The position numbers and the translations under genes were made by a program. DNA of 64,000 nt from positions 310,001 through 374,000 of the IMG/VR virus record IMGVR_UViG_3300021057_000274. The stretch is one strand, 5' to 3'. Positions 62,566 to 63,798 of the stretch are shown in pieces. The notes under the pieces are model-generated. The model did no database searches. It had not been told where the DNA came from and saw only the letters and a list, made by a program, of their open reading frames with translations. Each line of letters opens with the position of its first letter. The stretch's first letter is position 1.

Positions 62566-62594
62566 TTTACTTCCGTCGAGAACTAATATATAGT
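62566..62594 (+). promoter_or_regulatory. Sigma70-like promoter of the tRNA operon
   Basis: TTTACT-N17-TATAGT. Confidence 0.75.
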
Positions 62595-62602
62595 ATCATA
62601 CC

Positions 62603-62668
62603 ATGACGAACGTCCTATCACTTAGCTTGAGCTGGTCCCTGTCCTCGTATCTCGGGGAGAGGCCCTAG
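62603..62668 (+). CDS. Putative attenuator leader peptide MTNVLSLSLSWSLSSYLGERP
   Basis: ATG 8 nt after the -10 box; 12 of 13 consecutive codons are Leu/Ser/Tyr; the stop lies within the antiterminator strand. Confidence 0.8.
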   Translation: MTNVLSLSLSWSLSSYLGERP

Positions 62669-62707
62669 TCTCTATGTGATCTGACGAAAAGTCGACAGAT
62701 TCTAGAC

Positions 62708-62740
62708 CTAGGGCCTCCAAGTGAGGCCCTAGTCGTTTTT
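62708..62740 (+). terminator. Attenuator terminator hairpin
   Basis: CTAGGGCCTC-CAAGT-GAGGCCCTAG-TCGTTTTT; the 5' arm also complements 62659-62668. Confidence 0.8.
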
Positions 62741-62864: not shown

Positions 62865-62952
62865 GGATGGTTGGCAGAGTGGCCAATTGCACCTGGCTGT
62901 AAACCAGGCGCCCTGACGGGCTTCGGTGGTTCAAATCCATCACCATCCACCA
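62865..62952 (+). tRNA. tRNA-Tyr(GTA)
   Basis: CCTGG-CTGTAAA-CCAGG, variable arm, GTTCAAATC, CCA. Confidence 0.93.
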
Positions 62953-62957
62953 ACATT

Positions 62958-63049
62958 GGGTCTGGTCATAAGGACGGGTGGTCCTGTCAGGAGCCTGTAA
63001 AGCTCTTCCTCAGCGAGGCACGGAGTTCGATTCTACCCCAGACCCACCA
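62958..63049 (+). tRNA. Atypical tRNA(GTA), Tyr-like, 8-bp acceptor
   Basis: GGGTCTGG/CCAGACCC-ACCA; AGGAGC-CTGTAAA-GCTCTT; 4-bp T-stem with a bulged A. Confidence 0.65.
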
Positions 63050-63053
63050 AATT

Positions 63054-63143
63054 GGAGAGTGAACCGCACGGGGTGTGGCACTGCCTGGAAAGCAGTCGGG
63101 CTGGCGTAAGCTGGTCGCGGGTCGGGACCGCCGCTCTCCTCCA
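63054..63143 (+). tRNA. tRNA-Ser(GGA), 8/4 fold
   Basis: GGAGAGTG/CGCTCTCC, ACTGC-CTGGAAA-GCAGT, GCGG-GTCGGGA-CCGC, TCCA end. Confidence 0.85.
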
Positions 63144-63258: not shown

Positions 63259-63341
63259 CCCCTCGTGGCAAATGGAAATTGGTACACCTACTAGATCGAG
63301 AGTCTAGGCTTTTCTCGGTTCGAATCCGAGCGAGGGGACCA
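63259..63341 (+). tRNA. tRNA-Leu(GAG), atypical
   Basis: CTAGA-TCGAGAG-TCTAG; C33, enlarged D region, only a 6-nt variable loop. Confidence 0.75.
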
Positions 63342-63345
63342 GCAT

Positions 63346-63438
63346 GGAAGACGAACCGAGAAGGTCTCGGACTCGCCTTGAAAGCGATGGGATCGCGGCC
63401 AACCCGTGATTGGGGATCATCTCCTCCGTCTTCCGCCA
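63346..63438 (+). tRNA. tRNA-Ser(TGA), 8/4 fold
   Basis: GGAAGACG/CGTCTTCC-GCCA, 6-bp D-stem, TCGC-CTTGAAA-GCGA, GGGG-ATCATCT-CCTC. Confidence 0.85.
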
Positions 63439-63537: not shown

Positions 63538-63735
63538 ATGAACCTCAAGTCTAGAGAAGCAGGTGAGCTGATCCAGGGCATCCAGGTAAACGAGTCTCGC
63601 AGGGTGAAGTACTCGTCCTGGTACCACGCGATCGCTCGAAACAGAGGAATCACGATCAGGACGAGGAGGGTGAGCGATGACGAGATCATCGTCACCCGGA
63701 TCGAACCCAAGGATGACGAACTAGTCAGGGACTAG
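63538..63735 (+). CDS. Small hypothetical protein within the tRNA array
   Basis: SD AAAGGAG; MNLKSREAG...; its 3' end overlaps tRNA-Ser(CGA). Confidence 0.55.
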   Translation: MNLKSREAGELIQGIQVNESRRVKYSSWYHAIARNRGITIRTRRVSDDEIIVTRIEPKDDELVRD

Positions 63736-63798
63736 CGCTGCCTCGAAAGCAGATGGACTCGGAAACGGGCTGGGGGTCGGGACCTCCGTCATCCGCCA
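63711..63798 (+). tRNA. tRNA-Ser(CGA), 8/4 fold
   Basis: GGATGACG/CGTCATCC-GCCA, CTAGTC/GACTAG D-stem, CTGC-CTCGAAA-GCAG, GGGG-GTCGGGA-CCTC. Confidence 0.85.

What the first reader, a model, noticed from the sequence alone, without database searches (positions are those of the whole stretch)
62958..63049. Second GTA-anticodon tRNA with an unusual fold
It sits beside a normal tRNA-Tyr. It has an 8-bp acceptor (G1:C72, A73, CCA), a 5-nt acceptor-to-D linker (TCATA), a 6-bp anticodon stem and a 4-bp T-stem with a bulged A. Tyr identity elements are retained on a noncanonical scaffold. It could be a nuclease-resistant tRNA-Tyr, a decoy, or a tRNA charged with another amino acid.
Basis: seen in the sequence. 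Interest (0 to 1): 0.6.

Follow-up and report, generated by a model that had tools for sequence, protein, structure and literature searches.

The report
Conserved phage tyrosine tRNA, unusual fold
Next to a normal tyrosine tRNA, this 389-kb soil phage carries a second tyrosine-type tRNA with a non-standard fold; at least 59 copies of the same design sit in tRNA clusters (55 other phage contigs, one cultured phage, two bacterial draft genomes), where gene finders miss it and it is often the only tyrosine tRNA.

Summary
Window 62958-63049 (+) folds into an 8-bp acceptor stem, a 6-bp D stem with a UGGU tetraloop, a 6-bp anticodon stem (loop CUGUAAA), a short variable hairpin and a 4-bp T stem with a bulged A, then A73 and an encoded CCA.

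It is not a decaying pseudogene. A covariance-model search found 59 copies scoring 77-100 bits; ordinary tRNA-Tyr genes score 47 or less. Of 28 pairs, 24 show compensatory changes and 97% of cells are paired. MAFFT plus RNAalifold recovers the same fold.

In scans that left the anticodon free, every copy has GUA. A73 is invariant and G1:C72 nearly so. All copies lie in tRNA arrays. ARAGORN called none of the 49 copies checked, and Rfam's tRNA model missed all eight checked.

Two complete phage genomes encode tRNAs for 19 amino acids, all but Tyr; this gene fills the gap.

Best reading: a functional tRNA-Tyr on an "8/4" scaffold. That architecture is known for phage tRNA-Ser and tRNA-His; I found no report for Tyr.

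Charging, expression and any resistance to defence nucleases are untested.

The parts
62958..62965 (+). Acceptor stem, 5' strand (GGGTCTGG), 8 bp with 63038-63045
   Evidence: All 8 pairs show double compensatory changes across homologues. The 8th pair is GC 30, UA 7, AU 5, never unpaired.
62966..62972 (+). 7-nt acceptor-to-D connector TCATAAG (standard tRNA has 2 nt); family motif A(A/G)UAAG
   Evidence: Its conservation is partly forced by the scan patterns, which required TAAGG. The Phosso copy, found by BLAST, has TAAGT.
62973..62988 (+). D arm: 6-bp stem GACGGG/CCTGTC closed by tetraloop TGGT (tRNA-Sec / allo-tRNA-like)
   Evidence: MFE fold. Five of 6 pairs show double changes. RNAalifold on a MAFFT alignment predicts the same stem de novo.
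62989..63007 (+). Anticodon arm: 6-bp stem, loop CTGTAAA, anticodon GTA at 62997-62999
   Evidence: Anticodon-free scans returned GUA in all 61 structurally valid matches.
63008..63018 (+). Short variable-arm hairpin CCTC-AGC-GAGG
   Evidence: The third pair covaries (UA 14, CG 13).
63019..63021 (+). 3-nt spacer CAC between the variable arm and the T stem (family: CA + A/U/C)
63022..63037 (+). T arm: 4-bp stem GGAG/CT(A)CC with A63035 bulged in the 3' strand; T loop TTCGATT
   Evidence: Three of 4 pairs covary in the bulged register. Across the family the bulge is G 20, A 9, U 5, absent 8.
63038..63045 (+). Acceptor stem, 3' strand (CCAGACCC)
63046..63049 (+). Discriminator A73 and encoded CCA
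   Evidence: A73 in 42 of 42 distinct family sequences; CCA encoded in 38 of 42.
62865..62952 (+). Neighbouring canonical 7/5 tRNA-Tyr(GUA), 5 nt upstream
   Evidence: ARAGORN; Rfam tRNA 55.4 bits; cloverleaf MFE fold.
63054..63143 (+). 8/4 tRNA-Ser(GGA) in the same array, 4 nt downstream. Context: the phage uses the 8/4 architecture for all four of its Ser tRNAs.
   Evidence: Not called by ARAGORN or Rfam.
63346..63438 (+). 8/4 tRNA-Ser(UGA) in the same array
63711..63798 (+). 8/4 tRNA-Ser(CGA) in the same array. The fourth, Ser(GCU), lies just past the window at genome 374170-374265.

Best explanation
Window 62958-63049 encodes a functional, conserved, noncanonical tRNA-Tyr.

Architecture. 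It is of the '8/4' type: an 8-bp acceptor stem stacked on a 4-bp T stem, here with one bulged base. It has a long D stem with a UGGU tetraloop and a 6-bp anticodon stem, as in tRNA-Sec and allo-tRNAs. In addition it has a 7-nt acceptor-D connector with a conserved UAAG motif and a short variable hairpin.

Identity. It keeps the elements bacterial TyrRS is known to read: G34-U35-A36, A73, G1:C72 and a variable hairpin. It also keeps the loop contexts for queuosine-34 (U33-G34-U35) and i6A37 (A36-A37-A38).

Inferred mechanism. It is transcribed with the phage's class-II tRNA array and processed to the encoded CCA end. The host TyrRS charges it (the phage has no TyrRS of its own) and it reads UAY codons.

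In this phage it is a second Tyr decoder beside a canonical one. In many other phages it is the only one.

Why this scaffold exists is inference only. The likeliest selective reason is a Tyr decoder whose shape differs from host-type tRNA-Tyr. That could make it a poor substrate for host tRNA-Tyr-cleaving defence nucleases.
For: Shown:
1. The fold exists in the sequence.
2. There are 59 copies at 77-100 bits with family model R3. The next-best matches score 62 and 51, and canonical tRNA-Tyr genes score 47 or less.
3. Covariation: 97.1% of cells are paired, against 68% in shuffles and 41-49% when partners are slid. Of 28 pairs, 24 show double changes. The 15 highest mutual-information column pairs are all predicted pairs. 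MAFFT plus RNAalifold recovers the fold without the model; 21 of 24 predicted pairs are compensatory.
4. A73 in 42 of 42 distinct sequences, G1:C72 in 41 of 42, CCA encoded in 38 of 42.
5. A scan that left the anticodon free gave GUA in all 61 structurally valid matches. The loops were CUGUAAA, CUGUAAC and UUGUAGC.
6. All 49 copies lie in tRNA arrays on the same strand as their neighbours.
7. Gap filling. Complete terminal-repeat genomes G037 (36 tRNAs) and G043 (27 tRNAs) have ARAGORN tRNAs for 19 amino acids, all but Tyr. G041 (91% complete) lacks only Tyr and Asp. G003 (13 tRNAs) has no other Tyr. Each carries one copy of this family.
8. The carriers span several phage groups (32-63% GC around the gene). 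They include the cultured Sinorhizobium phage Phosso, where the gene is unannotated.
9. No TyrRS or SerRS-type domain was found in this phage.

From the literature:
- 8/4 tRNA-Ser and tRNA-His exist in phages, and 8/4 tRNAs work in E. coli translation (PMC5389517).
Against: - There is no expression, end-mapping, aminoacylation or modification data. Only soil metagenome DNA runs hold the locus.
- A73 is also the bacterial tRNA-Leu discriminator, and LeuRS does not read the anticodon. Leu charging is therefore not formally excluded.
- The 7-nt connector has no counterpart in any tRNA shown to be active. Its effect on EF-Tu, the ribosome, RNase P and TyrRS is unknown.
- Mukai et al. found that some irregular 8/4 tRNAs are charged but not used in translation.
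- In this particular phage a canonical tRNA-Tyr sits next door, so the gene is not needed to fill a gap here.
The invariance of UAAGG and UGGU is therefore partly circular, and the counts are lower bounds.
- The nuclease-evasion rationale is untested.
Confidence: 0.7

Rival explanations
1. Non-translational tRNA mimic. The RNA is made and perhaps charged, but acts as a decoy or sponge. It might soak up a tRNA-Tyr-directed defence nuclease, or a host tRNA-binding regulator, rather than deliver Tyr to the ribosome.
For: - The scaffold departs strongly from the standard core: a 7-nt connector, and no D-loop A14/R15 equivalents.
- Mukai et al. report irregular 8/4 tRNAs that are charged but not used in translation (PMC5389517).
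- In this phage a canonical tRNA-Tyr is adjacent.
Against: - The anticodon, U33, A37, A73, the encoded CCA and a standard T loop are all kept. A nuclease decoy would need only some of these.
- In G037 and G043 it is the only Tyr-anticodon tRNA in sets that cover the other 19 amino acids. That points to decoding.
Confidence: 0.13
2. Missense tRNA. The GUA-anticodon RNA is charged with another amino acid, so UAY codons are partly recoded. Ser would follow the allo-tRNA precedent; Leu would follow from A73.
For: - The 8/4 scaffold is shared with allo-tRNAs, most of which pair Ser identity with non-Ser anticodons (PMC5389517).
- A73 is shared by bacterial tRNA-Leu.
- Rfam's tRNA-Sec model is the best Rfam match.
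Against: - The discriminator is A in 42 of 42 sequences, not the G/U73 of allo-tRNA-Ser.
- The variable stem is only 3-4 bp, against 6-8 bp in this phage's own 8/4 tRNA-Ser genes.
- The scaffold is tied exclusively to GUA, unlike the anticodon-diverse allo-tRNAs.
- It is the only Tyr decoder in several full tRNA sets. Ambiguous decoding of every Tyr codon would be costly.
Confidence: 0.08
3. A decaying duplicate of the neighbouring tRNA-Tyr (pseudogene), or a chance tRNA-like fold.
For: - No tRNA finder calls it.
- The folding z-score is only -1.55.
- It sits beside an intact tRNA-Tyr.
Against: - 59 homologues in several phage groups keep every helix through compensatory changes.
- Between this phage and relatives G024/G025 it is the best-conserved element of the array (84% over 80 nt).
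Confidence: 0.02

Closest known systems
[quoted passage not shown] 2017, PMC5389517)
   Same: - A 12-bp acceptor branch split 8 + 4.
- A long D stem closed by a tetraloop.
- Location in phage tRNA gene clusters.
- Missed by standard finders.
- This phage and its relative RsoM2USA carry 8/4 tRNA-Ser genes in the same array.
   Different: - Anticodon GUA with A73 and a short variable hairpin (Tyr-type identity), instead of G/U73 with a long arm (Ser) or His elements.
- A 7-8-nt acceptor-D connector with a UAAG motif, instead of 2 nt.
- Usually one bulged base in the 3' strand of the T stem.
- The scaffold is tied to a single anticodon, whereas allo-tRNAs span 35.
- The paper's main text does not mention Tyr. 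Its supplement was not held.
Bacterial tRNA-Sec (8/5), minor (8/4) tRNA-Sec and selC* tRNA-Cys with bulge A51a
   Same: - 8-bp acceptor.
- 6-bp D stem with a 4-nt loop.
- 6-bp anticodon stem.
- A 4-bp T stem with one bulged base.
- The best Rfam hit is the tRNA-Sec model (27.9 bits here; 31.7-33.6 bits for two homologues).
   Different: - The anticodon is GUA, not UCA or GCA.
- The discriminator is A73, not G73 or U73.
- The bulge is on the 3' strand of the T stem, not at 51a on the 5' strand.
- The variable arm is short.
- There is an extra connector.
- It scores below Rfam's cut-off of 47.
Canonical bacterial and phage class-II tRNA-Tyr (7/5), such as the neighbour at 62865-62952
   Same: Anticodon loop CUGUAAA, A73, G1:C72, a variable hairpin, T loop UUCGAUU, encoded CCA, and position in the same array.
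   Different: - Acceptor/T split of 8/4 rather than 7/5.
- D stem of 6 bp with a tetraloop, rather than 3-4 bp with a large loop.
- Connector of 7 nt rather than 2.
- Canonical genes score 47 bits or less on the family model, against 77-100 for members.
Phage T5/T6 tRNA-Tyr as counter-defence against retron-Eco7 and Septu PtuAB (PMC13096335)
   Same: A phage-encoded tRNA-Tyr that differs structurally from the host's. It is a functional analogy for why phages might keep unusual Tyr tRNAs.
   Different: The T5 and T6 genes are standard cloverleaves that differ in the variable loop. No cleavage or defence data exist for the present family. This is a resemblance of rationale only.
Other irregular phage tRNA-Tyr genes seen here: Aeromonas phage vB_AdhaM_G2 tRNA-Tyr, the Phosso second Tyr-like gene, and L131
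   Same: A long (5-6 bp) D stem and a 6-bp anticodon stem with GUA and A73.
   Different: They keep a 7-bp acceptor (7/5, or 7 + 4 with a bulge) and lack the UAAGG connector. They score 51-62 bits or are called by ARAGORN. They look like intermediate or parallel forms, not members.

Membership tests
Standard tRNA (Rfam RF00005; 7/5 cloverleaf) | Reaches the model's gathering score of 29 bits | tested here: not met
   No RF00005 hit at 62958-63049, even at E<=10. The seven homologues tested were not hit either. ARAGORN called 0 of 49.
Standard tRNA (Rfam RF00005; 7/5 cloverleaf) | 7-bp acceptor + 5-bp T stem, 2-nt connector, 3-4-bp D stem | tested here: not met
   8-bp acceptor (the 8th pair always forms a Watson-Crick pair and covaries), 4-bp T stem, 7-nt connector, 6-bp D stem.
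(8/4) noncanonical tRNAs (Mukai 2017) | 12-bp acceptor branch made of an 8-bp acceptor and a 4-bp T stem | tested here: met
   Eight of 42 distinct family members have a clean 8/4 branch. The rest, including this gene, have 8/4 plus one bulged base.
(8/4) noncanonical tRNAs (Mukai 2017) | tRNA-Sec-like D arm (long stem, tetraloop) | tested here: met
   6-bp stem plus UGGU; 5 of 6 pairs covary.
allo-tRNA / (8/4) tRNA-Ser | Ser identity: long variable arm and G73 or U73 | tested here: not met
   A73 in 42 of 42. The variable stem is 3-4 bp, against 6-8 bp in this phage's own 8/4 tRNA-Ser genes.
tRNA-Sec (Rfam RF01852) | Gathering score of 47 bits; UCA anticodon; G73 | tested here: not met
   27.9 bits; anticodon GUA; A73.
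Bacterial tRNA-Tyr (identity set) | G34-U35-A36 anticodon | tested here: met
   GUA in all 61 matches of an anticodon-free scan.
Bacterial tRNA-Tyr (identity set) | A73 discriminator and G1:C72 | tested here: met
   A73 in 42 of 42; G1:C72 in 41 of 42. The one exception has C1:G72, the archaeal-type Tyr pair (PMC5370408 for that identity rule).
Bacterial tRNA-Tyr (identity set) | Class-II variable arm | tested here: inconclusive
   A hairpin is present and covaries, but it is short (3-4 bp, 3-5-nt loop) and followed by a 3-nt spacer. Its orientation relative to TyrRS cannot be judged from sequence.
Bacterial tRNA-Tyr (identity set) | Tyrosylation by TyrRS and decoding of UAY | not testable with these tools
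   The only support is indirect: it is the sole Tyr-anticodon tRNA in otherwise complete phage tRNA sets.

The most novel reading that the evidence does not exclude
Phages of several lineages share, probably by horizontal transfer, a dedicated tRNA-Tyr chassis that is structurally orthogonal to the host type: 8/4 branch, tetraloop D arm and UAAG connector. It would still be charged by host TyrRS, but would no longer be recognised by host tRNA-Tyr-cleaving defence nucleases (Septu / retron-Eco7-type or anticodon nucleases). It would then be a counter-defence tRNA defined by its fold rather than by a few loop changes. It would also be a natural precedent for the synthetic noncanonical Tyr tRNAs used in genetic-code engineering.
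Probability: 0.3. Interest if true: 0.8.

Novelty: new variant of a known kind. Interest (0 to 1): 0.6.

Why it matters
1. Annotation. ARAGORN and Rfam's tRNA model miss this family. Phage genomes that seem to lack only tRNA-Tyr, including the cultured 469-kb Sinorhizobium phage Phosso, actually have one. Counts of phage tRNA complements are biased by this.

2. tRNA biology. It extends the natural 8/4 architecture from Ser, His, Sec and Cys to Tyr. It also adds a feature with no described counterpart in the papers I could read: a conserved 7-8-nt acceptor-D connector. That raises the question of how the tRNA core is built without a normal D loop, and how TyrRS, RNase P, EF-Tu and the ribosome accept it.

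3. Phage-host conflict. tRNA-Tyr is a known target of defence systems, and a fold-level variant kept by many phages is a testable candidate counter-measure. Phosso and S. meliloti offer a culturable system.

4. Engineering. It is a natural noncanonical Tyr tRNA scaffold that could inform orthogonal tRNA design.

Tried and rejected
- The search for related loci with the 304-aa protein just downstream of the array found no relatives.
- The search for homologous proteins plus look-up of encoding contigs on that protein led to T4-like contigs with no tRNA array next to the gene. They were useless for synteny.
- BLAST of the 92-nt gene against 50,697 phage records gave no match. Only queries with other family members found Phosso.
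- The nearest cultured relatives and large phages checked lack the family: RsoM2USA, XacN1, phage G, LR756504 and LR745206. They have canonical or near-canonical tRNA-Tyr genes. RsoM2USA's second tRNA-Tyr looked like a possible orthologue but is a 7/5 tRNA with an A·A mismatch.
- The first loose motif scan returned mostly ordinary tRNA-Tyr genes. So did the first anticodon-free scan.
- The genome-collection scan gave 120 pattern hits, of which only 2 are members.
- PHROG scans of the genes flanking the two MAG arrays could not tell phage from host.
- No RNA sequencing run holds the locus. Read laying was therefore not used and expression is untested.
- The mutual-information search for tertiary partners of the connector found nothing beyond the helices.
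Only genetic code 11 was used. Complex prediction and the structure tools were not relevant.

Full report
**Context**

The window is bases 310001-374000 of a 389,331-bp IMG/VR virus record. CheckV rates it 98% complete, and it is found in soil metagenome DNA runs.

It is a jumbo phage. It has RIIA/RIIB-like, helicase and PrkA-like genes. Its nearest cultured relative by helicase is Ralstonia phage RsoM2USA, at 41% amino-acid identity.

ARAGORN finds 48 tRNAs in the genome. A class-I array lies at 71-90 kb, and a class-II array starts at window 62777 and runs past the window's end.

**Checking the observation**

- 8-bp acceptor GGGTCTGG/CCAGACCC, then A73 and an encoded CCA
- 6-bp anticodon stem with loop CTGTAAA (anticodon GTA at 62997-62999)
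- 11-nt variable hairpin
- T stem GGAG/CT(A)CC with a bulged A
- a canonical tRNA-Tyr 5 nt upstream

RNAfold gives this architecture as the minimum-free-energy fold. The hand-written structure with the bulged T stem costs only 0.2 kcal/mol more.

The stable and conserved register is a 6-bp stem, GACGGG/CCTGTC, closed by TGGT. It leaves a 7-nt connector, TCATAAG.

On its own the fold is not statistically striking (z = -1.55). ARAGORN and Rfam's tRNA model ignore it. Rfam's tRNA-Sec model gives 27.9 bits, below its cut-off of 47.

**The array holds more uncalled tRNAs**

Four further genes have an 8-bp acceptor, a 4-bp T stem, a 6-bp D stem, a long variable arm and an encoded CCA. They carry the anticodons GGA, UGA, CGA and GCU, which is the full serine set. 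They lie at window 63054-63143, 63346-63438 and 63711-63798, and at genome 374170-374265. ARAGORN finds no canonical class-II tRNA-Ser in the genome.

This is the 8/4 architecture that Mukai et al. (2017) described for tRNA-Ser and tRNA-His of 'certain bacteria and their phages'. They also described bulged 8/4 variants for minor tRNA-Sec and tRNA-Cys (PMC5389517). RsoM2USA has 8/4-type tRNA-Ser genes too. The GUA gene therefore sits in a phage that already uses this known noncanonical architecture.

**Homologues**

I built a single-sequence covariance model (R1). I then ran motif scans of IMG/VR and found a family.

A family model (R3) separates members from everything else:

| Group | R3 score (bits) |
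|---|---|
| 49 copies in the first set | 77-100 |
| 10 more from an anticodon-free scan | 79-90 |
| Two irregular 7-bp-acceptor Tyr tRNAs | 62 and 51 |
| Ordinary tRNA-Tyr genes | 47 or less |

The window's gene scores 98.3 bits on the family model.

Members occur in:
- 55 other IMG/VR loci
- the cultured Sinorhizobium phage Phosso (PV764938.1, 422323-422413), where nothing is annotated at that place
- two dense tRNA arrays on contigs of alphaproteobacterial MAGs

Both MAGs also have an ordinary tRNA-Tyr next to tRNA-Gly(UCC) on another contig. The array copy is therefore an extra, probably phage-borne, gene.

**Is the fold conserved?**

Across 35 distinct sequences, 97.1% of pair cells form standard pairs. 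The figure is 68% after shuffling and 41-49% when partners are slid by 1-3 columns. Of 28 pairs, 24 show changes on both sides, and every helix is covered, including the 8th acceptor pair and the bulged T-stem register.

The 15 column pairs with the highest mutual information are all predicted base pairs.

That alignment was fitted to the model, so I repeated the test with a plain MAFFT alignment of 33 members and RNAalifold. This predicts the same acceptor, D, anticodon and variable helices de novo. Of the 24 predicted pairs, 21 carry compensatory changes.

The pseudogene reading is refuted.

**What identity does it have?**

Among 42 distinct sequences:
- the discriminator is A in all
- the 1:72 pair is G:C in 41, and C:G in one (with A73, that is the archaeal-type Tyr set; PMC5370408)
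- CCA is encoded in 38

The first scans required CTGTAAA, so I also scanned with the anticodon left free. All 61 matches that pass the stem checks have G-U-A at positions 34-36, in three different loop contexts. The 74 matches that fail the stem checks have unrelated loop sequences.

The scaffold is therefore tied to one anticodon. Allo-tRNAs, by contrast, span 35 anticodons.

The variable stem is 3-4 bp. That resembles tRNA-Tyr, not the 6-8 bp of the phage's own tRNA-Ser genes.

The invariance of UAAGG and UGGU is partly forced by the scan patterns. Phosso's copy, found by BLAST, has UAAGU.

**Does it act as the phage's tRNA-Tyr?**

All 49 copies checked lie in a tRNA array on the same strand as their neighbours, and ARAGORN calls none of them. 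Rfam's tRNA model also misses the seven homologues tested.

Only 7 of the 47 loci also hold a tRNA-Tyr that ARAGORN calls.

I read four largely complete carrier genomes in full:

| Genome | Size and state | ARAGORN tRNAs | Amino acids without a tRNA |
|---|---|---|---|
| G037 | 178.6 kb, terminal repeats | 36 | Tyr only |
| G043 | 175.8 kb, terminal repeats | 27 | Tyr only |
| G041 | 152.6 kb, 91% complete | 26 | Tyr and Asp |
| G003 | 210 kb, terminal repeats | 13 | Tyr among others |

Each carries exactly one member of this family inside the array. This gap-filling pattern is the strongest argument available here that the RNA decodes Tyr codons.

The phage in hand has no TyrRS or SerRS-type domain, so charging would depend on the host enzyme.

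**Distribution**

The DNA around the gene ranges from 32% to 63% GC.

Only G001 (345 kb, two copies), G002 (360 kb) and the fragment G025 share this phage's helicase, at 53-64% identity. Phosso, G003, G037, G041 and G043 do not. The family therefore spans several phage groups.

In the close relatives the class-II array is syntenic. G001 has Leu(CAA), the 8/4 GUA gene, Tyr, then Leu(CAG). This phage has Leu(CAA), Tyr, the 8/4 GUA gene, Ser(GGA), then Leu(CAG). At the nucleotide level the GUA gene is the best-conserved element of the array.

**Mechanism: what is shown and what is inferred**

Shown:
- a conserved, structured, tRNA-like gene of 8/4 type
- Tyr identity elements and a GUA anticodon
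- a position in tRNA arrays
- often the only Tyr-type tRNA present

Inferred from established tRNA biology:
- co-transcription and processing with the array
- tyrosylation by host TyrRS, which reads G34/U35, A73, the 1:72 pair and the variable arm
- Q34 and i6A37 modification, since the contexts U33-G34-U35 and A36-A37-A38 are intact
- decoding of UAY

Speculative:
- The extra connector may fill the core left open by the tetraloop D arm.
- The divergent shape may be selected because host defences cleave tRNA-Tyr. Septu and retron-Eco7 cut its variable loop, and T5's own tRNA-Tyr resists them (PMC13096335).

**Rivals**

- A decoy or other non-translational mimic (0.13).
- A mischarged missense tRNA (0.08).
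- A pseudogene (0.02).

Each is discussed in its own section, with the result that would refute it.

**Novelty**

The 8/4 architecture and its presence in phages are known. Noncanonical Tyr tRNAs have also been made synthetically (PMC6337575, PMC7590224).

I found no description of a natural 8/4 tRNA-Tyr, or of the conserved UAAG connector, in the searchable literature. The supplement of Mukai et al. was not available, so prior sighting in a figure cannot be excluded.

I file it as a new variant of a known kind. It fails the membership tests for standard tRNA, tRNA-Sec and allo-tRNA-Ser. It meets the structural definition of an 8/4 tRNA and the sequence part of the Tyr identity set.

**Limits**

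- There are no RNA data. Only DNA runs hold the locus, and read laying was not used.

Noticed in passing
window 63054-63143, 63346-63438, 63711-63798; genome 374170-374265 (L002:2170-2265): Four uncalled 8/4 tRNA-Ser genes (GGA, UGA, CGA, GCU) with non-standard T loops (GUCGGGA, AUCAUCU, AUCGAGA). They form the phage's whole class-II serine set. ARAGORN calls only one Ser tRNA, a 73-nt tRNA(UGA) at genome 81695-81767 with no long variable arm.
   Followed up: partly
window 63259-63341: A tRNA-like gene that no tool calls. It has a 7-bp acceptor, a standard T arm, A73 and CCA, but an odd D region and the anticodon-loop sequence UCGAGAG (C at position 33). BLAST found no match in relatives' arrays.
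   Followed up: partly
genome 375255-375338 (L002:3255-3338); also 374474-374590, 374900-375016, 375110-375236: More uncalled tRNA-like elements just past the window. One has loop CUUAAAC (anticodon UAA, Leu-like), A73-CCA and only a 6-nt variable region. The others have good T arms but unclear acceptor or anticodon arms.
   Followed up: no
genome 123181-123255: ARAGORN calls a tRNA with a CUA (amber-reading) anticodon. TAG still ends 97 of 459 long ORFs, so nothing points to recoding.
   Followed up: no
L029 (Ralstonia phage RsoM2USA MG752970.1, 94000-113000): ARAGORN finds 18 tRNAs here, including four 8/4-type tRNA-Ser and two tandem tRNA-Tyr genes. The GenBank record annotates only CDS in this stretch. 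After the Tyr pair lies a tRNA-like element (L029:16099-16179, minus) with a very long central stem.
   Followed up: partly
L370 (Sinorhizobium phage Phosso PV764938.1, 416323-428413): The annotated tRNA-Leu genes are only 77-79 nt, so they lack a long variable arm. Short Leu tRNAs also appear in L303 and L101. A second unannotated Tyr-like gene lies at L370:4686-4768 (7/5, AAAA connector, 5-bp D stem).
   Followed up: no
L434:2359-2439: A tRNA with a CAU anticodon on a similar chassis: 8-bp acceptor, a connector containing UUAAG, a long D stem with a UGGC loop, and no variable arm. It scores 43.6 bits on the Tyr family model and lies next to an irregular GUA-anticodon gene.
   Followed up: no
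L316:6250-6339: An 8/4 tRNA-Ser(UGA) in a Xanthobacteraceae MAG array. Its T stem, GGAG/CU(A)CC, has the same sequence and bulged A as the window's GUA gene.
   Followed up: no
L002:3356-4270 (genome 375356-376270): A 304-aa ORF starts about 20 nt after the last tRNA-like element. It has no Pfam hit, but has homologues at 40-56% identity in T4-like phage contigs. One homologue (P0037) is listed with PF01885, the Tpt1 RNA 2'-phosphotransferase family.
   Followed up: partly
window 62566-62732: A sigma-70-like promoter match (TTTACT-17-TATAGT) is followed about 110 nt later by a strong terminator-like hairpin with a T run (62708-62732), just upstream of the tRNA array. It could be a small RNA, or it could be chance.
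   Followed up: no
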